Assembly (NCBI GenBank): GCA_020536535.1
Contig: JAHLWZ010000957.1
Location: forward strand, 1 to 38,262
DNA: 38,262 nucleotides
From: Pelomyxa schiedti
Taxonomy: Eukaryota > Protista > Evosea
Reading direction: 5' to 3'
This document shows, piece by piece, positions 16,882 to 38,262 of this stretch. A model generated the notes under the pieces. The model did no database searches. It worked only from the letters and a program-made list of their open reading frames with translations, and was not told the origin of the DNA. The translations under genes and the position numbers were made by a program. The number at the start of each line of letters is the position of its first letter. Position 1 is the first letter of the stretch.

Positions 16882-19800
16882 CTAGAACATGGCTCGCCTC
16901 TTTTTTGTAGTAACACTGTTCGCCACTGCTTTCTTAGGCATTTGACTTGCAGCAGTGGTGGTTTGGCTTGCTGCTTGCTCGTCCACTTTCTTTCTTACAG
17001 CCAGGAAGAGAGCTTGAATATGACAAACCTGCAAATCTTCAGGAAAAATACTTTGGATGGCGCTGATGTCCCCTGGATATTTGAACTGCGGCCAGACATG
17101 CAGAACTTTGATGAGATTTCTTAAGGGGAATTCTGTTGTGAATCTATCCCCAATAATGTATCGAAGAACAACTCTCCCAAGCACAAACAGAATGATATGT
17201 AGAGTAATGCCAAAGGAGGTGAGGTTCTTAAGGAACATGTCGATAATTTCCACAGGTGGTGTCTCACAGTATGCAGGTTTGAGGTTTTTTACTTCAATGG
17301 GTAAGATCACATCTTCCAATGTTTCATACAATGTCACAATGCAGCGTAGTGGTGTGTTGGTAATCTCTGGTTGAACACCTTTGAAACTTAGTGTATCGGA
17401 AGACAGCCATTGCTTTGCATAATCAACAAGTGTCATATCTCTTGAACCACCGGTTTTGCACACACTTGATACAATTATTTGCAGCAGGGAGAGTGCTTTG
17501 TTTGTGTCTGGTATCCGTCCTTGCAACACAGTCAAAATGGCAGTGTTTATAGGGTGTGACCATTCTTGTTTCACCTAATTTTGCTATGTGAGTGGAAAAA
17601 CGAAGAATGAAGGAACCTTGCTTGCAACTTCAAGGAGAACGTGTTCACTGGACAAAAAAAGTTCCATGAAATAAGGGAAAGGTTCGATCCTATCAGCTTT
17701 CAATAACACACTATCTTTTACAATGGCCTGTGCAAGCTTGGACTCTATTGTTAAAAGATCATAGTGCATTTCAGTTCCAAATCCATACTCAGGGTTAGAA
17801 GCAGCAAATGGCAAAACGGTTTCCCATATTTCAGATGAAACGGATATGAAGTGAGGTTGCTGAGCGTTCTGAATATGAATTTCATGTAGGAGTCTAAGGC
17901 CACCCTCCTGCTGTAACATCTTTACAGATTTACAGCCCCTCAGTGCTATTTTAAAGGATTCCTCCAGGAACTGATTTTGATATTGTGCAATAGTGCTCAA
18001 CATCCCTGAAAACCAAAATGAGGCTTTCAAAGAAGAGGTACAATTTACCTGCCAGAAATATACCCTGATCTTTCTCGTCGATGCAACAGAGTTCAAAAGA
18101 TTGCATTTCGGACATAGAAGGAATTTGTTCTTGAGCAAACTTTTGGGATTGATACTGAATCTCTGAAGTATTAGTTAATATTCAGTTATTACATAACAAA
18201 AATTAGACCAGGCAAAGACTTCTTAATCGTATTCCAGGAAAGGGAGAATTGAGGAAACAGTTCTTTTAGATGAGGTACTCCTCTAATGATATGGGAAACA
18301 GCATTTTTGGCATCAGATCGTTTTACGAGATGGCCGAAATATTTTTTTACTGTAGCCACCCAGTTACACAACACCTGTAAGTGAGAAATATACTCCAGTT
18401 TCTGAAAGGAATTGAAAAGCAAGTGCAGGAATGGAAAGTCCGATCTTGAGTGAGGAAGACAGACAACCCTCGCTTTAAGCAATTCGTAGGAACCCAGGAG
18501 TGTTATACGGTACAAACGAGGTAGGCTTCGTGGATCCGGCTTGTCTACTTCAGTGATCTCTCTTTCTACTGGAGAGCTTTTTGCAAGCAGCATTTTCAAT
18601 CCATCAACAGTAAAGCTATTCAGGTTGTTGCATATGTGAGAATCCACAAATTTCTGCCATTCTATTTCCCATTTCGAGCGATCGGATTCAGTACAGAGTT
18701 GATGTCTTTGAAAGGAGAGTTTGGTAATTTGTAACAGTGACTGAATCACAACTAGGAGCATGACATCCTCAGTACAGCCAAGTAAATGCATAAGTATTTG
18801 CCAGTCATTGTTTATGTGGCTGCGGAACAAAGATTTAGGCTGGATTGAACTCTCTGATAGTAGAAAGGTAGATGACACAATCAGATGAAGTAAACGGTAG
18901 GCTGGAGGGGAGAGCTCTCTTTGAGTCCAATTCCATGACGCATTAACTTCTTCCTTAATATAACCAGTAACACTTGGAACCAGTTGTGTGATTTGTTCTA
19001 ACGGGTAGTTTGTGCCCTGATCAGCGCTCATGATTAAAGTACTACAAGAGGGACAGATGGTACTTTCTATCACTTTACCAGCACAACCAAGGATGAAATT
19101 TGTTCCACATTGGCATCTGTAATGCTTTACAGAATGGAGGGAGTCGGTACTTGGGGGTGCTGAAAAACCAGCCAAAACAAACTGGTCAGCGAATACTCCC
19201 TGCCTGTAAGATCCAAAGGGTGTTAGCTTTAGGTTTGATGTAGCTATTAATATGTCCAGAAATACAAGGATTACGCTAATATGAATATCATGAAGAGAGG
19301 ACACAGGCTTCAGAGAAAAAGGTTCCCTATTCTTAAGGATTTCCAGCAAAAGTCTTTTGTGAGGAAATTGAGATGGACATGCTGTTTCCACCCAGGAGAT
19401 CAAGTATTCTTCACCTTGGTGTAAAGGTCGTTGACTGTATGTAAGAAATATACTGCCGGAAAAAGCACATAAAAGGGATTGAGCTTTTTCATTGGTAGTT
19501 GCAGAAGACATAAATTCGTGCAGGAAAAGTGTCCTTCGGTCTTTAACCACCTCAGCTATAAGTTGCTCTCCCTCAGAGGCAGTGACAAGGAGATCAAAGG
19601 GATTGTAAATCAACCGATAATGTCTTGGAGCCCAATGGACAGTCTGGAGCCAGCTTGGTACTGTACTTTGCTTACAGAATTCCTCAATTTCAGTAATTCC
19701 CATCCCTTGCTGGTGAAGCAACTTCAAAAAGAAGGTTTTAGAGGCAATGGACCTTGGGTGCTCCTGTTGCTCAAAAAAAGCAGCAAAAAGGTCAAAAACA

Positions 19801-22800
19801 GCAGAACAGGGCATTTGACCAGTTTTAATTCCAATTGCAAAAAGACGAAGTAATGCACGCATAAGGGCAACAGCAAAACAAGTTCGAATGGAAACTACTT
19901 CACTTGAAAGTACATCCATAGCTGGTAAAAATGCAACTTTGATCCATGAAGCAGCCTCTTCCTGAGCCAAATTCGGGATTTCCTCCAAGTAGTTACTCTC
20001 CAAAATGGAACACAATACAGCTTGGATATTGCTTTCTAAATCAGGTGGCACAGGATGAAAGACTTTCTCTACTTCTACAAGTGCAGCTGGGGTGGTGGCA
20101 CAGACTGTTGCAAAAATGGTGGAATCGGTTTCTTTGGAGTGTTCAATTATTTCATCCAGCAAAACAGAGCAATGGCACAAGGATAAAAGCGAAGATGGGC
20201 CTACTGTGCTTAGAGAAGAATGTATATTTGATAACACAGATGGCAAAGAGTGGTCAAAAGCAATTTCCAATTTCTGGAAGTGCAGATTTCCAAGAAATGA
20301 TTGTAATAAAAGACATACTTCCACACAATTTACTTGTTTGATGCTCACAACTGCTTGAATAATTTTATTAAAGAGAGTGTCTGAGGTAAAAAAATCTTCA
20401 CTATCTGTTAATAAACACAGTTCAAGAAACTGTGAAATAGGAACACCATAGGGAATGATGAGGGAAAAATCATTTAGCAAATGCAATATAGACAATTCAA
20501 CTGGAGTAGTGATGGCCCATCTCCTTATGGAAGTCAAGGAATATTCTCTCACTTTCGAAGCAAGAGCTGACCACGATTCAATACCACCAGTTATCAGTAG
20601 GTCACTTTCAGAACCAGGAATCAAAAGTTTAGATGCCCGGGAAATAAGACCAGAAACAAATTCAGCACCAGTATAGTTGCAGTTAACCAATTCTAACATC
20701 TTATCTATTGGTAGTATTTTTGTGAGACAAGAGGCAAGTTGAATCTGTGATCGTATGGCATCACCTTTCAACCACCACCAAAAATGCACTTCAAATGGAG
20801 GCATATCTCCAGCACTCTTCTCAATATTGGCTTCAAGAATTTGTATCTGTTGTTGAAAGGAAAGTGCAGAACCCACATGCTTAATTGAAAAAAAATCTCG
20901 AAGGTACAAAAGAGTGGCACTGGTTCCTTTGCACAAAATTGTGTTCACTGCCGGTGGCAGCACTTCTTGTACTATTGATGCAAGGTCTTCAATGGCTTTG
21001 TCTTTAGAGACTTCGTAACTAGTAAGCACAACATCTCTGAAAGATTCAATCTTGGTCATGATTATATTGAAAAAGGGGAAACTTGTGTTAAAGTTTGTTC
21101 CCAGCCCTTGCAGTAAGATTCCAGGTTGGGGAATTGGCACCCCAGGTATATTTAATGCCTCGGTTGAAAACATGTAATCACAAAGAACTTTTATCATCTG
21201 TCCTGTTTCTTCATTGCCAGAGAGAAGGTAAGGATACAAGGCGCCAACATTTTCGAGGGCAAATAATACTCTGGAGAGAGCGGAAATTGCTTCAGCTGTA
21301 AAGAAGTCGATTAATGCTAGAATCAAGGAACCGTGACGTAGAAGTTTTGTTTTACTGCACGCAATTGTTATCTGCCATTGGGGGCACTGGGAGGACTGTT
21401 GTAATATTTCTTTTGTTTTTGATTGCAGGAAGTTCAACAATGACGAAGTCTTAATCAGAGACACCATATTTGTGATTCTGCTTGAGTACTGTATATCACT
21501 TGGATAAAGAATATTCATAAAAGCCCGTTCTAGTATTAGGTCAATCCCAAATTGTTGGTTGTCAAGAAGTTCATCCAATGGCTTGCTCAATAGTTTCTCC
21601 ACCATTAGACCGGGAAATGGGAGGTTAAGTGATTCAACAGTTGAAACAGTCCATCCACTCAGATAATCAAATAACCACTTTGAAGAATCTGCTCTGTGTT
21701 CATGTTGATTGAGGTACACTACAACACACACATGCTTTGGAGTGCTTTGTTGTGTTGCATGTGATTGATCAATTGCAAGTCGTAGTAAATGCATATTGTC
21801 TACATCCATAGGTTCACTAGCATTGCACTGTATGACAAGTAGGTTGGCTTCAGATTCAAAAAAAACCTGAATTTTTTGGCGAAGTTCTCGCTCCGACTTA
21901 AATATTCCCAAAGTTTCCAAGTGGAAAGTCATTAAACCATTTAGCTCCAAGGCTATATCACAATTGATTGGACTAAATGTAAGAACCTCCAACTTACACC
22001 CTTTTGGTGAATTCTGAATGTGCCACTCTAGAGCACTCTTTAAATTTATGTGGCTCTGCTTTTTGAAGTAGAGGTCCTTGAGGGAGCTAAAATGGCTTGC
22101 ACCTTGGGACTTGACAGTGCGCATAACTCCAGAAGCTGTGGCAAGCTGAGTTAAAGAGGATTTTAGTGTATCCAAAATAGCTTGGTCTTCTCCGTGGATA
22201 GACAGAATTAATGAACACAGTACATCCCTGTTCCATCCTAAAAAAAGGTCTTCGACACTGAACTCTGGGTGCTGGGGAAGTTTAGAAATTTCTTTTGACC
22301 ATGTTATTAGTTCTTGTAAATGCCGCTTTTGTACTTCAGTGAGCACTTCTTCATATGTGAGAACCTGCTTCTCAAACCGGTTCAAAAATGGGGGATCTGA
22401 GAAAGGCAGAGTCTGTTCTTCTGTTAAAACAATGCACCTAAAGGAATCATGCACAAAGCACATGGGGTTTGAATGGGCACCAAGTGCGATTCGACAATTT
22501 TTTCTTTCTCCAACTACTGTATAAGACTGATTCAGCAAATCATAAAGGCTGCCATAGATAGGTTCCAGACCTTTCAAGATCAAATGCTCACCATTTTCCA
22601 TCGCCAATATAATTCTGCTTAGAATTCGATAATAGTAGTCTGCACACTGATCATGGGGAAACTTGCTTCCATAGAGAAATGTAGGAGAGCATACACTCTG
22701 TAAGATCATATTGATTGCACTTTCCCCTCTTGTTATTATTAGAAGGTGCCTGGCACAAGGGTCGTGAATATTTTGTCTAATGAGTTCCATAACAGCAATT

Positions 22801-25800
22801 TTACGAAAATGGTGCTGTTTGCTTGTCATAGTTTTACTGAGGAAACCTTGACAGATGCCTTCAAGTGTTCTTGGAATACCACCAAAATTGCGTTGAATTG
22901 CCCCATTAAGGTGATCATAAACTTCCATGTCTGATGCATTGCCCTTGAGTGTACGAGAAATACACTTTATAAGTGAATAAAAGTCTCTAAGGCCATGAAA
23001 ATTGGCAGGGCTCTGTTTTTTTACATGCTCATAATAAGCTTCAGATAAGCCTTTAAGCCAGTTTTCAATTGGTTTCTCGATTGGTGTGTTTGGACATAAC
23101 CCTTTCAGTATTTCTTTAGCTGTATTTAAGAGATCAGCTGGCTCAGGATCAGGACGAGTGAGATGCAATGCTCGGTTCATTTTCGCAGCATCCAGTGCCC
23201 AATTAGAGATACCAATCACTGCTACTTCAGGTATCTCCTTAGGAAATCCTGGCTCCAGAAGGCTGTGCAATACCTTGAGTGGATTGTGACGGGAAATTTC
23301 AGCAAGCCCAACTTCATCAAGGATGACAACTGGAAGTACACCTTTCTTTACAAACTGCTTTGCTTTTGTGAAAACTTTTTTAATACCCTCAGAAGTAGCT
23401 GACTCGGAACCTTGGAATGATATACTTATGACTTGGTCACATTTTTGAAACCATTTATCCCGAGAATCAGCTCCTCTTAGGTTCCTGTTAATCAATTGCA
23501 TGGAAAGAGATTTACTGCACCCAGGTTTGCCAACCAAAAATATTGGAATTTTGTTCAAAATGCATACCAAAAGAACAAATACATTCTCAAGAAGTGCTTC
23601 ATTTAACGCTGTTCCAGGAGGAAGTTCCATCCTCTTTAAGTAATCTTTCTGCTCTTTTCTAAGAATCTTCAAATATTCCTGCTCTCCATACCCTTTGTTG
23701 TACCCACAAGAGTGCAACACATGGCATGCCAGCTTACGAAACTGCTGTCGTAGAATTGGTGTTTCAAGTGCGGAGTGGTAGCAATGAGACAATGCAAGAA
23801 TAATGGCTTTTACAGAGGGGTGTACCTGTAGTTCTGGTTTGTGCCGACGGGAAGTTTGTTGCTGCCAGTTAGAAAGACCAATCCTTTTTTCTCTTAAGGG
23901 CCGAGAAAAGCTTGCCATAAACCAATGGAAAAGTCGTATGAAACGTCTTATATCTCGCAAACTTACACTCCAAGGTGTATGCACTTTTCTCAAAAAAGAT
24001 TGAGACCGTGACAGTAACTTGCTCACAGTCGACACGTACTCTGATGGAAACTGTGGCATATCTGGAACAGATTGTGATAACATACAGGAAATATAAGCTT
24101 TCTCATCCTCTTCCGAGAGGCACCCATAGTCAAACACATACTCCAGCATGGACTCAGGCAGTGGCAAGACGGAGTAAACGAGCCTTGTCTGATTGGGTGT
24201 AACCTGTACTTTGGTTGACAGTAAGCCACCAGCTGTTACCTCTGAGATACCGCATAGACGATAAGGATTGCAAGCAGCAAGGAAAGTGATATTGGAAGGA
24301 AGAGGAGATCCCAACAGTCGATGATGCACCACAACTTCCGACAGTACCCCAATATGTTCAGAGGTATTTATTTCATCAAAAAATGCCCAGCAGTCTTGTG
24401 TACTTCCTGTCTGAGCTGTGAGTTTGTTACACTTTTGTGTAACATCTCTAATGAAGTTAATGATTTCTTCTAACGATGTGCCAGCATGGCAATTCAGGGT
24501 TTCAAAAACAGGCAAGTCCAAAACACTTTTTAAGAATCTAATCAAGCTTGTTTTCCCACACCCAGTGTCTCCCATCAAAATCACAGGAACGTGGCAATGA
24601 ACCCGGGTTATTACCATTGCCATTTTTAATAAGTTGTCAGGGGTAATAGAGTATCCTTGAAGTACAGACTGGCAAGGGCTATTGTCTACTCTGCTTATTC
24701 TTTTCAGTTTTTCAATTAATTGAGGCTCTGATAGAGCTCGGTAGTCTTCTAATGTCTTACTTGGGCTCTGTGTTGTCAATAGTTTCTCAAAGGTCTTTGG
24801 CATATTTGTTTTGTAGAGAGCAGTAATCGACTGTGCATCAACAGAATGAAATATAACCATGAAAAAATCCAAATTCTCCCAGCTTTGAGTGTGAGAATTG
24901 AATAGCTGAACCAGTCGTTCTTCAGGTACATGTGATAAGCTTCTTTTTACCTCTTGTTGTTGAAGATTTCCAATGCCACTAGTTGCAAATTTTGATGCAA
25001 CTTGACATAAAACATCAACTAAGAGTGACCTAGTGTTTGGGTCAGCCCCCATGGCCTGGAGATTTTCAACTCGGAAAAACTGACTGAGTGACATCTTCCT
25101 CAGTTGATCAGAAAAGATTCTGAGGAAGGTGAATAAAAGGAAAAATGATGGTGGCCAGTCTATCCTTGACAAGAAGAATTGATTGAGGAGCACCTTACAT
25201 CGAGCATCTGGGATTACTAAAGCATTTGAAGCATTCAAGTCTTCACCAAAGGAAATTTCTTGAGTATCAATGAGGTGTTTGTCTTGTGAGTCAAGATAAT
25301 TGCAGACCACTTGAATGGGGTGCTTTATATTGTGGTTCACAATAAGGTTATCTAGTGACCATGTCAACCTTTCTTCTTTAAATAAACTTCCCAAGTAGAA
25401 CTGGTTTATAAGCTGACTTTCTGCTGTGTTGGCAATTTCAATAAATATCATTCTTTCAGAAGGAATATGGTAAACACGCTTTGCCCCACTAGAGATTGAA
25501 CCAAGAACAATTAACTCAAATAGAATGGTACTCAGTAATTCAGGGTCATTTACCATCCCAATATTTAAGTGCAAGGCTTCAAATTTGCTAAGCTTAGCAC
25601 TTCTCAAACTAGACAATATACTGCCTCTTTCAACTGGACCACTGATATCCACAGTACACACCCCCTTTCCCATTTCAAAGCACTTCTGGAAAATCATTTC
25701 AGTTTTTCCAAGACCCGCGCTGGTTGAGGATACAATTGTTACACTTGGAAACATATTTGTCAGGAGCGTGTGTAATTGTGGTGTTGGCATTCCAGCAATA

Positions 25801-28800
25801 TGCTGGCTAATTGAATTGAATGCATTTCCAATCCATTGTTTTCCATTCTTTCTTTGGCACACAAGGGCCAATCTGAACTGGTTGTGAGCTTCCTGAGCTT
25901 GCATTACAGTTTTCGATATATGTTGTTGGGATTCAGTAGATAACAATTCTGGGTGAACACAGCAATAAAGGGAGTCAGGGAACCCGGCTTTTGTAGCCCC
26001 CAGGCATCTATTAAGAAAAATTTCGATTTCTTCTTGCTTTGTTTCAGATGTACAGAAAATCAACTCGTGACGTTCTGGCATAAATCCATGATTGGTGTAC
26101 AATGCCATTACTACATTCAATTCAGATTTATCCCCAATAATTGCAACAAAAATTTTCCCCATGGTAACTTGGCAATCAGTGAACTGATCTCTCGTTTCAT
26201 TAAACACCAATGGCACTTTACATCGCTTGTGTGTTAGAAATACTGATAAATTTTCCCCAAGGGCATTGAGACACTCAAGGTTAAACTGGATGGGAGGAAG
26301 TACTGCTGCACATTTAAGTGTAACTTCAGAGGGTAACAAACAAATTAATTCCTGGACTTCAGAACTTATGTGACCTGAGAGAAGTAGATTGTAAAGAGTC
26401 CATATTTGGTTACTTAAGAAGAAATTCAAAACATAGTGATGTTTTCGTGACTCGTCAAGAGCATTCACAACTTCATCCAGAGAATTGTCAAGATCTCTAT
26501 TCATTTCCTGAAGTGTGTGTACATTTGTATGTTCACAAGCATATTTTGAACCGCAAACGCCAAGGTCGAATATGATGTTCAGTGAAGAGACAATATCTTG
26601 AATTATATCAACAACTAGAATAAATTGCTGCATTGAATTCAATTCAATCTGGCTTGTTGTTCCAGAGAGTCTAACAGTAGGCTTCACTCTTTGATAATCT
26701 GTTGAGGTAAAAAGTAAAGCACGACTCCTCAGGTCAAGTAAATCATTCAGAGTCTTCATGCCAGGCTTCTCTCTGAACGTCAAGACTACCTCACATTGGG
26801 AATCCTTAAAGAAAAAGCGAAATGTGCCTTGACTTATTGTGTTTTGTACAATTTCTCTTGTAACTTCTCCTCTGTTGGCCAGTGAATCAAAGGCATGTTG
26901 TAAGGCATAGAAATTTTCATTACAACTGCGTAGTTTTCCAGCAATTGAAGGACATTCACTACTCACTCTATTCACAACATTAATAAACTCCTCTAAAGAA
27001 CAGAGAGGCTTAACATTGTCTACCAGTGGGGAGATCAGGCGCTTCAAGTCAACCAAGTCAGCTACACATCCTTCTTGGAGCATCTCATCAGAATAGTCTT
27101 CAAAAGCACCTACCAATTGGCGGAGATCCTCAGATCGTTTCTCCTTCAGGAATGTAATCAAAAGTGTACTATCAGTAAGCATTTCAATAAAAGGCCAACT
27201 TGCAGTAGTAACAGCAGAGATTAGACTGGTGAGTTGTTTAGTTTTTATTGCAACATCAGTGATAAGGGAGGCATCAATTTTAGCTGGCTCTAGTGCATCC
27301 ACAGTAACTTGCAGTTTTGAGCAATGCTGTGAAAGTTCACAGATTATCATCGCTCTTAGAAGAAAGGCAGTATTTCGCCTATGGGTTGCTAAAGATAGCA
27401 CAGATTCAAGAGCTTGTTTAGTCTGAGGTGTGAAAGGCGCAAATAATCTCTCTGCTTGAAAGATTTCTGAGGATAGGGATTGGGGATCTATTGAGCCGAA
27501 TACTTCACAAGCAACCTCAAAGGTGAGAGGTTTACTTTGTGCAAGGTTCCTCCAGAAGGAATTAAAACAAGTTAAAGCCGAATTCATAGCTGTCAAAACC
27601 TCATCAACTGTAGAGGGGGTTGTGTGTTTGACCTCAGATTGCCAAAAACTTTGGAAGCTGGTCATATTATAAACTGGAAGTACTAGTTTGAGATGACTTA
27701 AGGGTAACAAAAATGGGTTCCAGAACTCCAAACTTCCTGCCTCCTGTATTCTCAAAGGTGCTCCTTGTGTGTTTTTCCCTTCTTTGAGAACTTGAGCAAA
27801 GCTGGACAATTCTTCTGAAGCAAATGTAGGCACACAAAATTGACGAAGAAACACACTAATGCTTTCAAAGTTTTTGGAGAATTGATTGAAATCGTTCATA
27901 GCTACCTCCACTATCCGAGAGGCTTCAGTTTTGTTAACAGTAAAAGGAGTGATAAACTGAGCAATGGTCAGGGACTCAATAGCAGTGAGGGATTGGAATT
28001 CTTGGATGGGCATTGTTCTTTCAGATAAAGCCCTGGCAAGTTGACTCAGAGTGTTTCTTACTGTTTGCACTTTGATATTTGCATGAGTGATGGGACAACT
28101 CTCTGTTAACATAATAATTCGCCACCAAAAAGGTCCTCCTTTCATCACTGTTACAGCTAAATTATCAGAAGTATGCTCTGGATTGATTGTAGGCAACAAC
28201 TCTAAAAGGTGGCACATGCAAGTGTCAATGAGGGAATTGCTCACTGTATATTCTGAATAAATTGCTGGTTGGCAATGACAAAGTTTAGCTATAATTGCAT
28301 CCAGTTGAGGGAGTGATGGAGTGGCAGAAAAATATGGCTTGATAAAATCCTTGAAGCCATTGAAATACAATTCCATGTTATTTGAGGTGGAAACATCACA
28401 GGCAGTCTCCAAGAAATCGGGCAAAGTGAGAGATTTTTCTATAACAGAATTGTATAAAGTAGATTGGAGGGGACCATCAGATAACTTGGAAAATAAAAGA
28501 GATGCGGACTTCCATAAAACTTGATTAGTGGGGGCACTGTGAAGCCAGGCACTGCAAGTCCCTTTAATAAGCTCATGTGAAGCTCCCTGCTGTTTGAGAG
28601 AGTTGATGATAGGTGGGAAAAGAGTCCAATTACAACCAGTCAATGAAAACTTCGTAACTAGCTCCTTCAGTAAAGTGGGAAAAGAGTTGTCTCCAAAGAG
28701 ATTAGGCAAATCAAAGAAAGGAAGCAAGTCAGATTCCACAGTGGCATTCAATACTTCAGATTTCACTATATTAGCAAGTTCTTCCTGAAAGTTCTGTAGT

Positions 28801-31800
28801 CTCGTCATATTCTCAGATTTGCAGTATGTGAACATAGCAACACGTGATTGCTTCGACCAGTATTTGGTGCAAGGTGAGCAGTGAAACTCAGGAATGTACA
28901 TAGAGGCCTTCTGAAAACAATTCAGATATTGTTGTACTGTTGGTGCAGAAGTGGCCAAGGAGTTAAATATAACTTTTAGATGAGCCTCTTTACTGATTGG
29001 TCTCTTTTGTATAAGTTCGATAACAAAATTCACAAGGTCAGCATATTCTTTGTCCAAGAATTTCTGTTCGGTACATGGTTTGATAAAGTCTAGCCAGGTG
29101 AGTGGTATTTGGTGTATGCTTAAGAGATTCATCCAACTTCTGGGATTAGAAATTGGAAGAGTGACCAATCTTTTGATTGCACACTCCAAACAGTTTAAAA
29201 TGAATCCTGGTAAGGATACACCATTAGAAAGACTTTCTCCAATAGCTTTGAATGAAAGATCAGGATTGGGCCACAAGAAAGAAGGTTGTGACAGATATTG
29301 ATCATTTGAGACTATATAACCAAAAACTATAACAGCCAGGAAGTCCTCATGTATTTGGGGGGAGTGATGCAAAGGTAGTATTTCTTTAGAGGGTTCCAAC
29401 TGAGAAAGGAGTGCTTGCAGTTGGGTAAAATCTTTGCTGGCTGAGGAGACAAAGGCATTGCAACATAGCTTAAAATAGCACCTGAAGACAGAGACATGGT
29501 TACAAGAGGCTAAATAACACTTGAGGCTCAATCGGAATTGATGTGGCCAATGAAAATCAACAAGATTATTACTGTCTGATGTAGCACATTCCCAACAGAG
29601 TTCCTCTTTTGTTTGATGTAGGAACTTGTACTGAACAGCCTTCATGTTAGTGAAGAAAAATGATGGAGAAGACCAATCAACAATACCACTAAAATCTGTT
29701 CCACGTTGTAAGGCCACCTGCCAATGGAAATTACTTAGGGGGAATAGCAGTTAATACACCAAAACCCTTTTACTTTAGGCGGTGCAAATAGACTTACCCT
29801 CATATCCTTGTCCCAGGTTCCAAGCAGTTGGTCATTTCCAACAATATAGACAGAGTGAACCCTTTCTGGTGCACAGACATGAAAAATAATTGGTGTGAGG
29901 TAAGAAACTTCCAATGTTCTTATAATTGCAGAAGTGTGGTTGACCCGGGAAGAAAGAAAGGAATCCAAGGCCAGTGTTTGACAGGAGGAAGCTATGCCCA
30001 CCATGGGATGAGTGAATTTGAGACTGCTCACATCTACGTATGATAGTAAAACCATGACACAACAGTGGGTGTCCCCACCATATGAAGGATGTAGGTATTT
30101 GCAGATGATTTGTTGATAGGAACTGGAGGAAATACTTTTAATGGGGCACACCTTGCACAGTTCATTCATTCTCCACAATTTGGGAGTGATATGCATTGGT
30201 GTGTTTAGCAAGTAATAAATACATGGTAAGATGTAAGACCATGACCATTCCCCCGGTGGGATATAAAGAATTCCCGAGGAGGGTAGTGAGATATTTGAGG
30301 AAAAAGAAGTTGAGATAGAAGTGAGCATAGAACCAGCATGAAACTCAGCTGTGTATATTTGACGTGAAGAAGATATTTCTGTGCAAGATAAATGGATCTA
30401 GGCTACTTCAGTTCTATAGAACAACAGGGGTGCATACCGAAAGAGAATTTGGGAGGATTATTATTGGTTCCCGGTTTTGGATTGGGCAGGAGTAACACAG
30501 AAAGTAGGTTTTCTTTTCTTCCTTAGGGGAAGATAAGGTACTCAGGGCACGTTTGTGAAAGCTGAGGGTATCTCTGCTTAACACTGTTGTATTGTTTGAA
30601 GGTGTTCCTGAAGAAAGGAGACTTTGAGGAGGGGTTTCGGGAAGAGTTACATAGGGTGGAACCAAGTCTAAGAGATATTCTGTCTTACATTATTTTTAAA
30701 GAGATGTGAAATGCAGAACCATTGTCCCTTGTAATAGTCTCATGCCCCATGTATGATGGGTGAAGGTGCCAAGCTTTGATGCACTCTGAACACAACAACC
30801 GGTCACATGACTTGCAAAATGTAAAGCACTCCTCTTCCTTGGACTTCATCATAAATGAGGTGCAGTATGAGCACTCTAACCAATAAAGGCTATCAATATT
30901 TGTTGAAATTTTAGACCACATTTACTTTTAATGGCTCCCCTTTTGTGGGTTTGTCTGCCCTTTGACTTATGGGAATTAGTCAAACAACTGAAGCAATAAA
31001 ATTCCTTGCAGTCAACACAGAAAAAAGATGCATCTTCCCCCCCATAGTCACACTTAATTATGGAAACTGTCAAAGCTAAGAATAATTTAGATCTCCCTGA
31101 AATAGAGAATAAGAGGATAATTGACACACATTGGTGACACCTTAGTTCAGGGGAACGATGTACAAAATCAAAGCACTGTTTACAAAGCAGCTTTCTACAT
31201 TGTGGGCATTCAGTGCAAGAGACTGTACTGGAGTTGCACCATCCACAAGTAGGCACTACAACACTCACCACCACAGACTGAGCAGGGTCTCGGTGATGTG
31301 AGAGTTTCAAGTGCATAACTGCATCACAGGCTGTGCAGAAAAGGGGGGCATCCAGGCAGTCAGCACATCGGAAAAGTCCCTCTTTCTTCCCACAGTTACC
31401 ACATCCTGTGTAACATTTATTTGATTCCTTGATGGGAGTTTTGCGTACTTATAAGTTCTATGGTTGTGTGTTTCTTGCGAGCCTCGCTCTTGTGGGTTGC
31501 CTTGAAACATGCCAAACAAAACAGTGCAGGCTTCAACTCTTTAAAACATTGTTCACATTTCTTCACAGCCGGTAATTCTTCACACGCTTGGCACGGATCT
31601 GTTGCTGGTGGTTGCGTTCCTACCGATAGTCAAACGGTTGTTCGGCGTCGTACGTGCAGCTAAAATTTGTTTTGTGAAAGAACGACCTGAGTGGTCCCTA
31701 TTCACATACGCGGTGTGATAGAAGGCATAGCAACGAGAACAATACGTCACACCACACTCAGTGCAGGGACAACCGGCCGCCCCTTCGCATTTGTAACACA

Positions 31801-31807
31801 CCTGCAT
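16882..31807 (-). CDS. Giant RNF213/mysterin-like AAA+ ATPase-E3 ligase (~4,800 aa): 6 B-box-like Zn fingers - CBM20 - stalk - dynein-like AAA+ core - E3 module with RZ-like finger - CTD
   Basis: RNF213 hallmark motifs in the 3842-aa ORF: SAGLGKT, LMGDTGCGKTSLI, FFDEINT, AACNPYR, SVSLRDIRR, FLVGKPGCSKSLS, LDEVGLAEISRHNPLKVLHSLLE, GISNWALDAAKMNR, FHGLRDFYSLIK, YDLLNQ, PFLNRFEKQ. Intron 29718-29797 (gtaagt..cag, phase 0) links it to upstream exons. Three short introns link it to the exons ending at 16882. The AAA+ core call is very secure; attachment of the B-box exons is likely but inferred. Confidence 0.9.
29585..29890 (-). other. CBM20-like carbohydrate-binding domain split by intron 29718-29797
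   Basis: Spliced sequence IIFHVCAPERVHSVYIVGNDQLLGTWDKDMR|VALQRGTDFSGIVDWS...VQYKF...LCWE matches the CBM20 pattern VxGxxxxLGxW...W...YKF...WE. Animal RNF213 also has an N-terminal CBM20-like domain. Confidence 0.78.
30730..31807 (-). other. Six tandem B-box-like zinc fingers (N-terminus of the RNF213-like gene)
   Basis: Six units of CxxC..CxxC..[FYL]CxxC...H..H: CYKC/CTEC/YCSRC; CQAC/CEQC/FCLAC; CGNC/CADC/FCTAC; CGWC/CPQC/LCKQC; CDYG/CVDC/YCFSC; CSYC/CKSC/LCSEC. Short GT-AG introns lie between several units. Confidence 0.8.
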
Positions 31808-31843
31808 TTTCTGGATAAAAAAAAGAAACGGGGTTTTTTCTTT

Positions 31844-32944
31844 TTATAAGATTGGGGGGAGATCGGGGAGAGTTGATGAACAGGCAGCTTTAATTTTGGT
31901 ATAATCCCTGGCATTGCCGCTTGCAGGGCGCCCAAGGGCCGTTACACTCCACCCTCCTGTTATTCGTTGTAGCACACACATAAGTACAGCCTGCCAGGCA
32001 CCAGCTTTGCGAATTGGGAAATCACTCAAAGGGTTGTTGGGCGTGCTCTGGTCATAGAGGCTTACTGTGGGTGCAGAAAAATGGCGTATAGTTGGCACTT
32101 TCCATGCACTCAGAACAAAAAAGAAGTAGGCAGAGTCAATGGGAACCTTGGAGAGAGAAATGGAGATGTGGTGTGTCCCACGCTCGACACTGCGGTCCAG
32201 AATATCACCCGAGTGTCGTAAACATGCATGAGGTCTTCTATGGTGATAATCTGCAAGGAAAAGGAACTTTCCACGTTTGTCATAGACAAGACAGGTTCCA
32301 TCAAGGTAATCAGTTTTGTGAGAAGGAAACCCCCAGGAGAGGTCAAGCCTAATTTCCGATAGGCTTGCTTGAGGTCCAACGAAACAGTGCATCACAACCA
32401 GCAACTGAACGTTACTTGTGGGAGAAACGGAATGAGTACCAAGTGTCGCTTTACTGCCATTCGGCATGACATCAGTGAGTTCTTTACCATTGGAAATCAA
32501 TCGCTGCTTCTCCACCGTGATATCGGTGCGCCTTTTAACGATACGCTTTATTCTAGAAATTTTAGTTTTTGTCTTGAACGGGACTTGTATAACGTCCCCT
32601 GCCAGCAGTGAGATAAAAAGAGTTCCTTGTGTTGCAGATACTGTCCTGTTCGAGTTGCCTTGTGGAATGGAATAAGACTGCGCAGTCCACTGCTGTTGAA
32701 GAATTTGTTGGTCTTCCACAGGAATAGGAGAGCTGCAAACAGGGCACGGCTTCTCGCTGGAAACGGCATCAAAGTGAAGATACTTGGCTAAACACTTAAC
32801 AAGCATTAAATTGTAAAAACCTCCAGCTGTATAACAAACCACGAGACACCAGGTTGGGTGATGGTGGCAGCCAGGGCCCATTGTCCTCGAGGAAGGAAAG
32901 TCTTCGCGTAGTTTCCTTTCGGCACAAGACGCACACAAAGCCAT
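31844..32944 (-). CDS. RING finger - ubiquitin-like - TerD domain protein (2 exons)
   Basis: ATG at 32944. Removing the 45-nt GT-AG intron 32795-32839 gives CASC..CHH.PTWCLVC..CPVC (C3HC4-like RING). Ubl: LFISLLAGDVIQV..KISRIKRIV..TVEKQRLISNGKEL..VQLLVV, with no di-Gly. TerD-like: IRLDLSW..DYLDGTCLVYD..LRHSGD..ISISLSKVP..FFFVLS..WSVTALG. Confidence 0.8.
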   Translation of the reverse strand: MALCASCAERKLREDFPSSRTMGPGCHHHPTWCLVVCYTAGGFYNLMLVKCLAKYLHFDAVSSEKPCPVCSSPIPVEDQQILQQQWTAQSYSIPQGNSNRTVSATQGTLFISLLAGDVIQVPFKTKTKISRIKRIVKRRTDITVEKQRLISNGKELTDVMPNGSKATLGTHSVSPTSNVQLLVVMHCFVGPQASLSEIRLDLSWGFPSHKTDYLDGTCLVYDKRGKFLFLADYHHRRPHACLRHSGDILDRSVERGTHHISISLSKVPIDSAYFFFVLSAWKVPTIRHFSAPTVSLYDQSTPNNPLSDFPIRKAGAWQAVLMCVLQRITGGWSVTALGRPASGNARDYTKIKAACSSTLPDLPPIL

Positions 32945-33158
32945 TCCACAAAGCAAGTTCTTTAAGGAAAAAATGAAAGGGTTATTGCAAGAATCATCAG
33001 GAGAAATATAACTCTGAGACTGAAACCTCCTCGCCACACTGAGACGTGTGTTCTGTTCCCTAACATCTCCAACTCGATCTCTCGGTAACAGTTCCGAAAT
33101 TTCTCCCCACGAACCTGAAGGTGCTGTTCCTTGAACCGTCTAAGAGCTCTTTTAGCCG

Positions 33159-34845
33159 ATGCGAGCCGTTATTACCCACCTTCGGGTTTCGTTTGCTCTG
33201 GTTGTTGTCCTTTCTTGTTTTGCCTCTGCCACAACCACGTACGACGTGGTAGCCGACTGCGGCGCCAAAGGGGACGGCGTCACGTCGGACGTCCAGGCCA
33301 TCCGCTACTGCGTCTCCAAGGCCGGGGCGACGCCGGGCGGGGCGACCGTCCGGTTCCCGGCGGGCAACTACCTCACCGGCCGCATCAGCCTCGAGTCCAA
33401 CGTGCGGCTGTGGCTCGACCGCGACGCCACGCTGCTGGGCTCGCTCGACGTAAACGACTACAGCGCGACCAACCACGACGCCTGGGCGCTGATCCACGCC
33501 TACCAGGTCTCCAACGTCAGCCTCGAGGGCGACGGCGCCGTCGACGGCCGCGCGGCCCTGTGGGTCGACCACTGGGACGAGCCCGAGCTGCAGCTGGTGC
33601 CGTGGAACAACAGCACCAACACGATCTGGAGCGGGTACGGGGGCTGCACCGGGTCCAACTGCAGGCCCAGGCTCGCGTGGTTCATACAGTGCGACAACAT
33701 CACCATCAAGGGCATCACGCTGAGGAACAGCGCCTTTTGGACTCTGCACATTTTGGGATCGTCGAATATCTACATTAGCGGAATCCACATCCTCGGTGAT
33801 GACAGGTGAGAAAAAAAGTTGGAATTGGTATTGGAATTGTTGTGCTCTCATTTCTTTAGAATCTTTATGGACTGCCTTGTTTAATGTTTAGTAGTTGTAC
33901 TCTAATGCAATAATAATAATATTTGGTAGGTTCCCTAACAATGATGCATTTGATCCTGACTCTTCTCACAACATCGTTTTTGAGAACAACTACCTTGACA
34001 CTGGTGATGATGGCGTATGTCCCAAAGCAACTTCAGGCTATGGACAGACGTATAACATGCACGTTCGGAACTGCACAATTAGATCCCGTTCGTGTGCTGT
34101 GAAGTTCGGTTCAGTTAACGCCGAAGACAGTGCGTTCCAATCTTCTTTGCTAAGCTAGAAGCCCACTCACTTTATCAACATTTCCTAGTGCACGATATGG
34201 TATTCGAAAATCTCACAATTTGGGATACCAATCGAGGTCTTGGCATTCAGCAACGTGACCCTGGCAACATCTACAACATAACATTCCGCAATATCAAAAT
34301 TTATGGAACCCGTTACTGGCCTGATACATGGTGGGGTGTAGCTGAGGTATTTCTGCTTTATACCCTTATCACAACGACTAAACGGTCCACTTACATAACA
34401 GCCAATCTATGTGGTCTCTGCACAAAGAAATGAGGGATACCCTACAGCTGGCATCTCACATGATATTACATTCGAGGACATCGAAGCAGTGGCAGAGAAC
34501 GGCATAATCATATCTGGAAGAATTGCAAACGGCGGTCAATCACCACGCAATATCACACTGCGGAATATCAAGTTGCACATTGACCGATACAGCAATATCT
34601 CCTCCCCCAGTCATGACTACAGGCCGTCCTCCGATCCCGAGGTTGTGGTGTGTGATATTGATGGAATCTATCTGGAGAGTGCACAAGAAGTAACTCTTGA
34701 CAACGTAAAAATCACCTATGGAACACCAACGCAAGACTTCTATGGGGTGTGTCTGGGAGGCTACAATTCCACTTATAAGTTAATTAACTTTGATTGCACT
34801 GATCCAGTCAAGCCGAAAAAAAGGGAAGAGGAAGTTGACAAGTAA
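33159..34845 (+). CDS. Secreted glycoside hydrolase family 28 (polygalacturonase-like beta-helix); exons 33159-33805, 33930-34129, 34189-34346, 34402-34845
   Basis: Signal peptide MRAVITHLRVSFALVVVLSCFASA. Motifs GAKGDGVTSDVQAI, FPAGNYLTG, GDGAVDG, RPRL, LRNSAFWTLH, and acidic catalytic motifs PNNDAFD and TGDDGVCPK, then CAVKFGS and WWGVAEPIYV. All three introns are GT-AG and restore the frame. Confidence 0.9.
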
Positions 34846-37900: not shown

Positions 37901-38262
37901 CTAGTACTTGAAGGTTGCATTGGATCAGCTTGCATATCGATGTTCTGAAGATGTGAACACACATCGGGTGATTTCGATTTTGATGTTGGTATGGACAAAG
38001 AGTGAGCCGCCACAATAGCATCCAGGGAATTGGGCTCAGATATAACAGGCACTACAGTAGTGAGGTCTTCATCTTCACTCAATCTAAGAGTAGTTGGCCT
38101 TCCACGCGTTGCTATATTGACCTTTGGCTCCGCACACACTTTCTTATCGGGGACTACGTCCCGGCTGTCATTGGCATTGACAGTGACAGTGACAGATACA
38201 GATACAGGGGCAGGGGCAGGGACAGGTACAGACTTCGATGATGGGATGCCACCCAGTGTTTG
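34919..38262 (-). CDS. Schlafen (AlbA_2) domain - NB-ARC/STAND NTPase - winged helix - Pro/Ser/Thr-rich tail; 5'-partial, multi-exon
   Basis: AlbA_2: FEEDSEHE|FKSL, YLNAFVNASGGTIFFGVADDGTISGI, VVEVKV, YVRRQGS. STAND: LIGRDYEL, Walker A LFGLPLVGKTS (~36988-37014), Walker B AIVLIEDV, LVLLTSQ, IVQLCCLMPVPIRKAA (GxP region), LTVFKGTFDITAAMAV, LIDYSLI, RFYQSDLV (MHD position). Stop at 34919-34921. Confidence 0.85.
38170..38232. repeat. Degenerate 6-nt tandem repeat in coding sequence (encodes VPVPAPAPVSVSVTVTV on the minus strand)
   Basis: gacagt gacagt gacaga tacaga tacagg ggcagg ggcagg gacagg tacaga. Confidence 0.7.

What the first reader, a model, noticed from the sequence alone, without database searches (positions are those of the whole stretch)
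16882..31807. RNF213-like protein with six B-boxes at the N-terminus and no internal RING
Seen: CBM20, the AAA+ core with intact Walker A/B motifs, an RZ-like finger and a CTD occur in RNF213 order. No Cys/His RING pattern is visible between the AAA+ core and the RZ finger, and six B-box-like fingers precede the CBM20. Established: B-boxes drive higher-order assembly of TRIM proteins (e.g. the TRIM5 lattice on capsids), and LPS ubiquitylation by RNF213 is RING-independent. Inference: a TRIM-like/RNF213 hybrid sensor that might polymerise on microbial or glycan surfaces. I know of no described protein with this architecture.
Basis: partly seen in the sequence, partly recalled or inferred. Interest (0 to 1): 0.8.

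Follow-up and report, generated by a model that had tools for sequence, protein, structure and literature searches.

The report
RING-less RNF213 relative beside B-box exons
An anaerobic amoeba carries a giant RNF213-type ATPase/ubiquitin-ligase gene that lacks the RING finger, as most non-vertebrate relatives do, and four unannotated exons coding six B-box zinc fingers sit just upstream and probably, though not provably, belong to it.

Summary
The window is the whole contig JAHLWZ010000957.1 of Pelomyxa schiedti (an archamoeba, not human).

- **Gene body.** The annotated 4411-aa 'RNF213' model (30328..16882) has a CBM20, Walker A/B motifs that read intact in AAA3 and AAA4, an E3 module and CTD collinear with human RNF213, a divergent RZ-like finger and no RING.
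- **B-boxes.** Six B-box fingers lie upstream (31807..30742) in four exons that no annotation holds. Ligands are intact at 47 of 48 positions, and the three boxes folded (B3-B5) adopt a B-box fold.
- **Continuity.** Joining the B-boxes to the RNF213 body is plausible. They share a strand, no 3'-end-like signal separates them, the upstream ATG has the better context, and open frames tile the spacer. It is not proven: a stop-free spliced path arises in 23% of shuffles, and no transcript-derived protein holds these exons.
- **Novelty.** RING-lessness is ordinary, seen in 26 of 33 relatives scanned. The B-box plus RNF213-like architecture already exists in Anaeramoeba flamelloides (5389 aa, two strains). 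I found no paper describing it.

Verdict: a new variant of a known kind, of moderate interest. Polymerisation on microbes is untested speculation.

The parts
31687..31807 (-). Putative exon 1: ATG at 31807 and B-box 1 (zinc-ligand span 31691-31798).
   Evidence: ANCHR-like_BBOX E 5e-4. Ligand pattern read. The start context 'gaaaATG' resembles other starts on the contig.
31449..31598 (-). Putative exon 2: B-box 2 (ligand span 31468-31593). The upstream intron is 31599-31686 (88 nt), or ends at 31605 or 31620; phase 1.
   Evidence: ANCHR-like_BBOX 28.4 bits, above the gathering score of 27, E 1.8e-6. Junction options listed.
30926..31405 (-). Putative exon 3: B-boxes 3 (31293-31403), 4 (31134-31247) and 5 (30945-31052; its second ligand is Gly). 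The upstream intron 31406-31448 (43 nt, phase 1) is the only GT..AG join possible.
   Evidence: Pfam E 0.032, 0.02 and 1.3e-9. AlphaFold mean pLDDT 76.7, above 90 over boxes 4 and 5. Foldseek finds CONSTANS/COL2 tandem B-boxes at E 3e-5. Junction.
30720..30875 (-). Putative exon 4: B-box 6 (30742-30873). The upstream intron is 30876-30925 (50 nt, donor GTAAAT, phase 1).
   Evidence: ANCHR-like_BBOX E 8.6e-4 and IBR 1.1e-3. Junction.
30438..30679 (-). Putative linker exon, rich in Ser, Thr, Pro and Leu and without a Met, in an open stretch of 91 codons. It is flanked by candidate introns 30680-30719 (40 nt; alternatives end at 30668 or 30608) and 30398-30437 (40 nt). This is the weakest link of the model.
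   Evidence: Open stretches, junctions, composition. Null tests: a spliced path arises in 23% of shuffles, and an open stretch this long has p about 0.045.
29795..30397 (-). Exon holding the annotated start ATG (30328), a 146-aa stretch with no Pfam match, and the first half of CBM20. The reading frame stays open 23 codons upstream of the annotated ATG.
   Evidence: Mapping of P0001, open stretch 30397-29738, no Pfam family on P0001:1-146.
29583..29890 (-). CBM20 carbohydrate-binding module, split by the annotated intron 29715-29794.
   Evidence: PF00686 at 31 bits, above the gathering score of 23.3, E 2.2e-7, P0001 aa 147-222. Intron sequence.
18210..29714 (-). Single 11.5-kb exon: N-arm, six-module AAA core, E3 module and RZ finger.
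   Evidence: ORF list, mapping, PDB match to RNF213 at E about 1e-121.
21909..25820 (-). Dynein-like AAA core (approximate limits). It holds an AAA2-like GLGKT at 25686-25727. AAA3 has Walker A at 24549-24572 and Walker B at 24372-24383. AAA4 has Walker A at 23508-23531 and Walker B at 23313-23324.
   Evidence: AAA_7 and AAA_5 Pfam hits. Alignment to human RNF213 construct residues 2431-3348. Motifs read.
19134..21908 (-). E3 module without a RING finger.
   Evidence: No Pfam family at E<=0.01, gap at the RING columns, profile match to the human RNF213 E3 region.
19032..19133 (-). RZ-like zinc finger of the 'CxCG' variant. The CxxC pair is at the canonical spacing. A Cys lies one residue before the family's nucleophile column. 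The 'IGG' motif and the His/Tyr position after it are absent.
   Evidence: jackhmmer E 1e-7 and the alignment. Human residue roles taken from PMC11549300.
16885..18971 (-). C-terminal domain, in four coding pieces separated by three short annotated introns (43-46 nt).
   Evidence: Mapping, matches to relatives' C-termini at E down to 7e-39, profile match through human residue 5235.

Best explanation
The locus encodes the Pelomyxa schiedti member of the RNF213 family. This is a giant enzyme built from a CBM20 sugar-binding module, a long N-arm, a six-module dynein-like AAA+ ring, a RING-less E3 module, an RZ-type zinc finger and a C-terminal domain.

Shown here: the domain content and order, the intact-looking ATPase motifs in AAA3 and AAA4, the absence of a RING, and six well-formed B-box fingers in four short exons directly upstream on the same strand.

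Inferred: the true 5' end of the gene is most likely the ATG at 31807. The protein would then start with the six B-boxes, joined through a Ser/Thr/Pro-rich linker to the CBM20, giving about 4817 aa instead of the annotated 4411.

Inferred mechanism, by analogy with mammalian RNF213:
- ATP binding in the AAA ring sets the conformation of the E3 module.
- Ubiquitin, or another modifier, is taken from an E2 by a cysteine of the RZ finger and passed to the target without any RING.
- CBM20 and the B-box array serve as target-binding and self-association or partner-recruiting modules.

The RZ finger here is degenerate, so catalysis may be weak, altered or lost.

The confidence of 0.6 is for the whole statement including the B-box fusion. 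Membership of the RNF213 family alone is about 0.97.
For: Family membership:
- PDB hits to RNF213 at E about 1e-121.
- Collinear matches of every segment to 67 relatives.
- A profile match of the E3/RZ/CTD region to human RNF213 at E 3e-64.
- CBM_20 above the gathering score.
- Walker motifs read directly.

RING absence.

RZ homology.

B-boxes: Pfam, ligand alignment, predicted fold and Foldseek matches.

Evidence for one gene:
- The B-box exons are on the same strand, and open frames tile 31843..29738 with only a 20-nt gap.
- Two junctions have a single or nearly single possible short GT..AG intron, of the size of the annotated introns.
- The annotated ATG 30328 has T at -3 and an open frame upstream. 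ATG 31807 has the A-rich context of three other starts.
- All other stop codons checked, except one, are followed within 70 nt by an A or T run of six or more. The stop after B-box 6 has none, and none occurs anywhere between the B-boxes and CBM20. The background for 70-nt windows is 12.7%.
- An independent B-box plus RNF213-like protein exists in Anaeramoeba flamelloides in two strains. A transcript fragment there spans its B-boxes and 170 residues beyond.

The upstream UBL-TerD ORF ends where its choanoflagellate homolog ends, so ATG 31807 starts a new gene.

RING-independent activity of RNF213 is published (PMC7311170; PMC11549300).
Against: - The public model, built with Augustus, PASA and EVM using transcriptome data (PMC8887013), starts at 30328 and omits the B-box exons.
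- A stop-free path from B-box 6 to the annotated ATG with two or fewer short introns arises in 23% of composition-matched random sequences.
- The 90-codon open stretch in the spacer has p of only about 0.045, and a real 813-nt spacer on the contig has one as long.
- Codon usage does not discriminate frames.
- No protein among the 1.84 billion representatives resembles the B-box stretch closely, so no transcript-derived ORF supports the join.
- None of the 67 relatives found by word search has a B-box.
- The RZ finger misses Pfam's model at E 0.01. It lacks the 'IGG' motif and the residue aligned with human His4537, and its candidate nucleophile Cys is displaced by one position.
Confidence: 0.6

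Rival explanations
1. There are two genes. A small stand-alone protein of six B-boxes (about 300 aa) runs from ATG 31807 to the stop TAA at 30685-30687. The RNF213 gene then starts at the annotated ATG 30328. The adjacency may or may not be functional.
For: - The B-box 6 frame runs into a stop 18 codons after the last His.
- The public annotation starts RNF213 at 30328.
- The spliced path is not significant against shuffles.
- Proteins made only of B-box arrays exist, such as the 825-aa Mya arenaria and 1789-aa metagenomic hits.
Against: - No A/T-run 3'-end signature follows that stop, unlike the other gene ends on the contig.
- The 359-nt spacer is almost wholly open in two successive frames and holds no Met.
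- The annotated ATG has a poor context.
- The annotation pipeline also missed the 431-codon UBL-TerD ORF next door, so its silence here is weak evidence.
- There is an Anaeramoeba precedent for the fusion.
Confidence: 0.3
2. The B-box exons are the 3' part of the upstream UBL-TerD gene. They would be joined by an intron that removes the TAA at 31844-31846, or by read-through. That stop is the only one separating two stretches in the same frame.
For: - The frame is the same on both sides of a single stop, and only 37 nt separate the stop from the ATG.
- In-frame GT..AG introns of 135-186 nt that skip the stop exist, one with a strong polypyrimidine acceptor at 31811.
Against: - The complete 535-aa transcript ORF of the Mylnosiga homolog ends at the equivalent position, 19 versus 14 residues after the conserved 'NA[KR]DY' motif, and carries no B-box.
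- The candidate introns would delete the end of the TerD match and are two to three times longer than any intron of this gene.
- The spacer carries the A6/T8 runs typical of 3' ends here.
Confidence: 0.05
3. The B-box exons are decaying relics of a former gene or of exon shuffling, and are not expressed as protein.
For: They are not annotated, and no matching protein is in the public collections.
Against: - 47 of 48 zinc-ligand positions are intact although the boxes are only 23-28% identical to one another.
- All frames are open across each box.
- Clean short introns of one phase join them.
- The AlphaFold model is confident, with pLDDT above 90 for two boxes.
Confidence: 0.03

Closest known systems
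Human and mouse RNF213 (mysterin; PDB 8S24, 6TAX, 7OIK)
   Same: The order CBM20, N-arm, six-module AAA ring, E3 module, RZ finger and CTD is the same. The AAA3 and AAA4 Walker motifs fall at positions matching human K2426, E2488, K2775 and E2845 by a constant offset of about 704 residues that I worked out from the alignment ranges and the motif positions, with residue numbers partly from my own knowledge. The E3/CTD region matches at profile level.
   Different: - There is no RING in the E3 module.
- The RZ zinc site is Cys-x-Cys rather than Cys-x3-His, the 'IGG' motif and the His4537 equivalent are absent, and the candidate nucleophile Cys is shifted by one position.
- Identity is about 30% in the AAA core only.
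- Six B-boxes probably sit in front of the CBM20.
Anaeramoeba flamelloides KAJ6250177.1 and KAJ3446893.1, 'B box-type domain-containing protein', 5389-5390 aa
   Same: It has an N-terminal array of B-boxes (Pfam zf-B_box 3.7e-29, ANCHR-like 2e-20), then an RNF213-like AAA core (31% identity, E 9e-92) and an RZ finger, with no RING. The host is also an anaerobic amoeboid protist that keeps prokaryotic symbionts (PMC11550330; PMC10579272).
   Different: - It has about nine or ten boxes rather than six.
- No CBM20 is detected.
- Its RZ finger is canonical enough for Pfam (1.9e-11).
- Its N-arm shows no detectable similarity to the window's.
- It is not sister to the window's protein in the AAA-core tree, although a clade of the two is not rejected (AU p 0.14).
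RING-less RZ-type giant AAA proteins of Glomeromycota (for example Rhizophagus clarus 'RZ-type domain-containing protein'), a soft coral, and unnamed metagenomic eukaryotes (P0024 is the nearest)
   Same: They are collinear over nearly the whole length at 28-35% identity. They lack a RING, carry the 'CxCG' RZ variant, have a similar AAA-to-RZ spacing (about 930-950 residues), and some are coded as giant ORFs without introns.
   Different: None has a B-box. Their RZ fingers keep the 'IGG' motif. Only 9 of the 67 show a CBM20 in their first 650 residues.
TRIM/RBCC proteins and plant CONSTANS-type tandem B-box proteins
   Same: The zinc-finger fold is the same. The best structural matches are the CONSTANS/COL2 tandem B-boxes, TRIM21, TRIM28, PML B1 and the ZFYVE19 B-box.
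   Different: No RING precedes the boxes and no coiled coil follows them. There are six boxes instead of one or two. The partner module is an AAA+/RZ machine.

Membership tests
RNF213 family | Dynein-like AAA core homologous to RNF213's, with Walker A and B in AAA3 and AAA4 | tested here: met
   phmmer against the PDB gives E about 1e-121 over 885 residues. The motifs GDTGCGKT/FFDE and GKPGCSKS/ILDE were read directly.
RNF213 family | E3 module (back, shell, core) and CTD following the AAA ring in the same order | tested here: met
   A profile of 13 non-vertebrate post-AAA regions, including the window's, matches human RNF213 residues 3618-5235 in one stretch at E 3e-64. The single sequence alone gives no PDB hit.
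RNF213 family | C3HC4 RING finger inside the E3 module (the feature that gives the protein its name) | tested here: not met
   There is no RING or U-box Pfam hit at E<=0.01, no C3HC4 pattern, and a gap at the vertebrate RING columns. The same holds for 26 of 33 relatives, so the RING defines the vertebrate orthologs rather than the wider family.
RNF213 family | RZ finger: a zinc site plus a catalytic Cys and His (human C4505/H4509/C4525/C4528, and C4516/H4537) | tested here: inconclusive
   jackhmmer gives E 1e-7 at the expected place. The Cys-x-Cys-Gly variant and the CxxC pair are at canonical spacing. The Cys lies one position before the nucleophile column, and there is no 'IGG' and no His or Tyr at +32. 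Pfam PF20173 is not hit at E 0.01.
RNF213 family | N-terminal CBM20 module | tested here: met
   PF00686 scores 31 bits against a gathering score of 23.3. It was described for human RNF213 in PMC11549300.
RNF213 family | ATP-regulated, RING-independent ubiquitin transfer by transthiolation | not testable with these tools
   This needs biochemistry. It is published for the mouse and human enzymes (PMC7311170, PMC11549300).
TRIM / RBCC family | N-terminal RING finger | tested here: not met
   The first finger after ATG 31807 scores as a B-box, not a RING. The Cys pattern in the neighbouring UBL-TerD ORF gives no RING hit at E<=1 and belongs to another gene.
TRIM / RBCC family | One or two B-boxes | tested here: met
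   There are six B-boxes.
TRIM / RBCC family | Coiled coil directly after the B-boxes | tested here: not met
   This was judged by composition only; no coiled-coil program was run. The 91 codons after B-box 6 hold 11 Pro, 12 Ser and 10 Thr, which is incompatible with a long coiled coil.
B-box zinc finger (Pfam PF22586 / PF00643) | Eight-ligand pattern C-x2-C ... C-x2-C ... C-x2-C ... H ... H | tested here: met
   Seven of eight ligand columns are invariant in the six boxes. The eighth is Cys in five and Gly in B-box 5.
B-box zinc finger (Pfam PF22586 / PF00643) | Profile score above the curated cut-off | tested here: inconclusive
   Boxes 2 and 5 are above the cut-off (28.4 and 38.5 bits against 27). 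Boxes 1, 3, 4 and 6 are below it (14.8-20.5 bits), with the same family as best or near-best hit.
B-box zinc finger (Pfam PF22586 / PF00643) | B-box fold | tested here: met
   The AlphaFold model of boxes 3-5 has mean pLDDT 76.7. Foldseek gives probability 1.0 to the CONSTANS/COL2 tandem B-boxes, the TRIM28 and PML B1 boxes and the ZFYVE19 B-box. Boxes 1, 2 and 6 were not folded.

The most novel reading that the evidence does not exclude
B-box arrays have been fused to RING-less RNF213-type machines in at least two anaerobic amoeboid lineages that live with prokaryotic symbionts, Pelomyxa and Anaeramoeba. The fusions arose either independently or by gene exchange. The B-box array would replace the lost RING as the module that recruits an E2, or that lets the enzyme self-assemble into a coat on bacteria, symbionts or viruses. 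This would be a protist counterpart of the TRIM5 and RNF213 coats of mammals.
Probability: 0.12. Interest if true: 0.75.

Novelty: new variant of a known kind. Interest (0 to 1): 0.45.

Why it matters
RNF213 is studied almost only in mammals, as the Moyamoya disease factor and as the ligase that ubiquitylates bacterial LPS.

This locus and its relatives suggest three things:
- The RING that names the protein was found only in the vertebrate members sampled, with a U-box or a RING-like insert at the same spot in two protists.
- The ancient core is the AAA ring plus the RZ finger.
- The N-terminal 'sensor' end is swapped freely. CBM20, B-boxes, SAM and Tudor domains all occur there among the relatives scanned.

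If the B-box fusion is real, it links the two best-known coat-forming innate-immunity scaffolds, TRIM B-boxes and RNF213, in a single polypeptide of a free-living amoeba full of endosymbionts. That would give a tractable comparative test of what each module contributes.

The locus also flags an annotation error in the public P. schiedti record: a truncated 5' end and a missed UBL-TerD gene.

Tried and rejected
- **Codon-usage scoring.** Log-odds trained on the giant exon did not separate frames beyond the effect of stops.
- **Spliced-path search.** An exhaustive search showed many stop-free paths, so the existence of a path is not evidence. The shuffle test put it at 23%.
- **Single-sequence PDB search.** phmmer of the C-terminal 1650 residues against the PDB found nothing. 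A family profile was needed.
- **B-boxes in relatives.** phmmer of the B-box pieces and a ligand regex against the 67 relatives found no B-box, only a ZZ domain in P0044.
- **Other giant B-box proteins.** A word search with the B-box region of the Anaeramoeba protein found only itself, so it says little about others.
- **Anaeramoeba DNA.** I did not try another route.
- **AU test.** It did not finish on the 51-row tree. A 20-row tree with the simpler model gave p 0.14.
- **Cryptic RING next door.** The 'CGMALCASC...CPVC' pattern in the neighbouring ORF gives no RING hit in Pfam at E<=1, in the window or in its Mylnosiga homolog.
- **Other scans.** Rfam and tRNA scans of the window were empty.
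- **Joined model.** Exons were searched one by one by reference.
Full report
**Source.** A word-based protein search returns a 100% identical, 4411-aa record named 'E3 ubiquitin-protein ligase RNF213 [Pelomyxa schiedti]' on a contig of exactly the window's length. The contig is GCA_020536535.1 JAHLWZ010000957.1. P. schiedti is an archamoeba. The contig is not human. The gene lies on the minus strand.

**Observation: the RNF213 body.**
- One ORF of 3842 codons (18189..29717) dominates the region. It matches human and mouse RNF213 chains at E about 1e-121 over 885 residues of the AAA core.
- Reading the translation gives Walker A GDTGCGKT and Walker B FFDE in the module aligned to human AAA3. 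It gives GKPGCSKS and ILDE in the one aligned to AAA4.
- The annotated model maps to five coding pieces, 30328-29795, 29714-18210, 18163-18047, 18003-17614 and 17571-16885. They are joined by GT..AG introns of 43-80 nt.
- On that spliced model CBM_20 scores 31 bits, above Pfam's cut-off, at residues 147-222. The domain is split by the first annotated intron.
- Every segment of the protein (N-arm from about residue 600, pre-AAA, AAA, E3, RZ, CTD) finds its counterpart in the same order in relatives.
- The C-terminal 1650 residues alone find nothing in the PDB. A profile of that region from 13 non-vertebrate relatives matches human RNF213 residues 3618-5235 (8S24 construct numbering) in one collinear stretch at E 3e-64.

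**No RING.**
- Pfam finds no RING or U-box in the giant ORF or the terminal exons, nor in the 927 residues between the AAA core and the RZ finger.
- A C3HC4 regex finds none. In an alignment of 33 family members the vertebrate RING columns are a gap in the window's row.
- This is the common state. Only six of the 33 (all vertebrates) have a RING and one protist has a U-box at that spot. By eye a RING-like insert also sits there in Thecamonas.
- The window's protein, its nearest relative P0024, the Glomeromycota proteins and an Acropora protein all have the gap.
- RING-lessness therefore does not set this protein apart. Mammalian RNF213 works without its RING (PMC7311170; PMC11549300).

**RZ finger.**
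- Pfam's RZ model does not reach E 0.01. jackhmmer seeded from a Glomeromycota RZ region recruits 33 family members, including the window's residues 3706-3739 (19032-19133), at E 1e-7.
- In the alignment the window has the Cys-x-Cys-Gly form of the first zinc site. Most non-vertebrate members and two turtle paralogs share this form, in place of the Cys-x3-His of human C4505/H4509. The CxxC pair is at the canonical distance.
- The cysteine proposed as nucleophile in human RNF213 (C4516; PMC11549300) aligns with Ala, with a Cys one residue earlier. The conserved 'IGG' motif and the position of the proposed general base (H4537) are absent. The nearest relative P0024 keeps all of them.
- The finger is homologous but degenerate. 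Ligase competence is open.

**B-boxes.**
- Upstream of the annotated start, four open stretches in alternating frames carry six fingers with the pattern C-x2-C, C-x2-C, C-x2-C, H, H.
- Each box, scanned by reference, has ANCHR-like_BBOX as best or near-best Pfam family, with E from 1.3e-9 to 0.032. Two are above the gathering score.
- Aligned to one another they are only 23-28% identical. Even so, seven of eight ligand columns are invariant and the eighth fails only in box 5.
- An AlphaFold model of the stretch with boxes 3-5, built with 26 homologous stretches, has mean pLDDT 76.7 (above 90 over boxes 4 and 5). Its best PDB matches are the tandem B-boxes of CONSTANS and COL2, then TRIM21, TRIM28, PML B1 and ZFYVE19.
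- The six B-boxes are real and look maintained by selection.

**Are they part of the RNF213 gene?** The public annotation calls no gene between 33159 and 30328, so both the B-boxes and a 431-codon ORF further upstream were missed.

Evidence bearing on the upstream gene:
- That upstream ORF (31847-33139) has ubiquitin-like and TerD domains.
- Its only detected homolog is a complete 535-aa transcript ORF of the choanoflagellate Mylnosiga. It ends at the equivalent position and has no B-box.
- The TAA at 31844 is therefore a true gene end, and ATG 31807, 37 nt later, starts something new.

Splicing within the B-box array:
- The joins are well defined. Only one GT..AG intron can join box 2 to box 3 (31448..31406, 43 nt), and essentially one joins box 5 to box 6 (30925..30876, 50 nt, donor GTAAAT).
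- All introns of the array are phase 1.

From box 6 onward the model is weaker. Candidate 40-nt introns (30719..30680 and 30437..30398) lead through a 91-codon Ser/Thr/Pro-rich, Met-free open stretch into the frame of the CBM20 exon. That frame is open 23 codons above the annotated ATG.

In favour of one gene:
- No A or T run of six or more lies anywhere between the B-boxes and CBM20. Such runs follow within 70 nt the stop of five of the six annotated genes and that of the UBL-TerD ORF, which amounts to four of five independent spacers. The background for 70-nt windows is 12.7%.
- ATG 31807 has the A-rich context of three other starts, while ATG 30328 has T at -3.

Against one gene:
- A stop-free path with two or fewer short introns arises in 23% of composition-matched random sequences.
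- The long open stretch has p about 0.045 and is matched in a real spacer of the contig.
- Codon usage is uninformative.
- An exhaustive HMMER search of 1.84 billion representatives found nothing close to the B-box stretch, so no transcript-derived ORF exists in the collections.

I put the single-gene model at about 0.6. Each was searched by reference, so no test of the joined model was run.

**Is the architecture new?**
- The same exhaustive search returned one giant hit, P0095, of 5389 aa. It is Anaeramoeba flamelloides KAJ6250177.1, with a 97% identical copy in a second strain. A transcriptome fragment covers residues 197-761.
- It has about nine or ten N-terminal B-boxes (zf-B_box 3.7e-29), an AAA core 31% identical to the window's (E 9e-92), a Pfam-positive RZ finger, no RING and no detectable CBM20.
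- The B-box plus RNF213-like design therefore exists in public databases. UniProt labels it only 'B box-type domain-containing protein'.
- I found no paper that mentions it. No paper holds both 'Anaeramoeba' and 'RNF213'. The Anaeramoeba genome paper never mentions B-box, ubiquitin or E3. The RNF213/B-box/CBM20 search returned only mammalian work.
- In an AAA-core tree the window's protein is sister to a metagenomic eukaryote protein (P0024, support 95-98). The pair sits in a clade with Glomeromycota and coral-like sequences. The Anaeramoeba protein is on a long branch elsewhere.
- Forcing the two B-box bearers together costs 21 log-likelihood units but is not rejected (AU p 0.14). A single or double origin cannot be decided.
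- None of the other 67 relatives has a B-box. Nine of them have a CBM20 and others carry SAM, Tudor or TPR modules in their first 650 residues. This suggests that the N-terminal end of the family is modular.

**Mechanism.**
- Shown: domain content, apparently intact ATPase motifs, absence of a RING, presence of B-boxes.
- Inferred from the mammalian enzyme: the AAA ring regulates a RING-independent E3 module, whose RZ finger takes ubiquitin from an E2 by transthiolation.
- Inferred from other B-box proteins (established knowledge of the TRIM5 B-box 2 and PML B1 assemblies): the array could drive self-association or recruit partners.
- CBM20 suggests a glycan ligand. Even in human RNF213 its role is unproven.
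- Because the RZ finger is degenerate, a scaffold or sensor role without catalysis is a live alternative.
- That both B-box bearers come from anaerobic amoebae with prokaryotic symbionts (PMC10579272; PMC11550330) is suggestive only.

**Verdict.** This is a new variant of a known kind. Interest is moderate: the RING-less state is ordinary, the fusion is unproven here, and it has a precedent elsewhere. The recurring, undescribed B-box/RNF213 combination in protists is nonetheless worth a cheap RNA-seq check.

Noticed in passing
window 31847-33139 (-): An unannotated 431-codon ORF with a ubiquitin-like domain (E 1.5e-6) and a TerD domain (1.8e-5). Upstream of these, by eye only, is a RING-looking Cys pattern that Pfam does not recognise. 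Its only detected homolog is a 535-aa transcript ORF of the choanoflagellate Mylnosiga fluctuans. The ORF's stop is 37 nt from, and in frame with, the B-box ATG.
   Followed up: partly
window 34919-37935 (-): The next gene upstream is annotated with a Schlafen AlbA_2 domain. Three genes with immune-type or stress-type domains (Schlafen, UBL-TerD, B-box/RNF213) therefore lie on the same strand, interrupted only by a GH28 gene on the other strand.
   Followed up: no
window 33159-34845 (+): A glycoside hydrolase family 28 / pectate-lyase-like gene in an amoeba. Its origin (vertical or by gene transfer) was not examined.
   Followed up: no
window 18210-29714 (-): This is an 11.5-kb exon without any intron, in a genome reported to have 7.43 introns per gene. 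By contrast, the 2 kb at the 5' end would hold six introns. The nearest relative on a metagenomic eukaryote contig (L002 8001-22232) is a single 14.2-kb ORF beside an intron-split V-ATPase gene. Giant ORFs without introns may be a trait of the family, or a sign of recent acquisition.
   Followed up: partly
window 30680-31686 (-): All four candidate introns within and just after the B-box array are phase 1, as expected for modules spread by exon duplication or shuffling.
   Followed up: partly
window 30328 (-): The annotated start codon of the RNF213 model has a poor context (T at -3) and an open frame upstream. The first 146 residues of the model match no Pfam family. The public 5' end is probably wrong whichever gene model is right.
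   Followed up: partly
relatives P0008, P0011, P0017, P0024, P0037, P0050, P0054 and others (RZ regions): The RZ finger has two forms: Cys-x3-His (jawed-vertebrate RNF213, Thecamonas and two protist sequences) and Cys-x-Cys-Gly. The second form is commoner among the relatives found and also occurs in two turtle RNF213-like paralogs. The His that is mutated in functional studies of human RNF213 is therefore not a family-wide feature.
   Followed up: partly
alignment A1, columns around 1363-1410: A RING (vertebrates), a RING-like insert seen by eye (Thecamonas P0042) and a U-box (P0039, an MMETSP transcriptome whose organism name is cut to 'Gymn') occupy the same insertion point of the E3 module. 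This suggests an old E2-binding insert that was lost several times, or gained more than once.
   Followed up: no
P0070 (Mya arenaria, 825 aa) and P0074 (metagenome, 1789 aa): These proteins are made of 10 and about 22 tandem B-boxes and nothing else that Pfam recognises. They show that long B-box arrays occur widely outside TRIM proteins.
   Followed up: no
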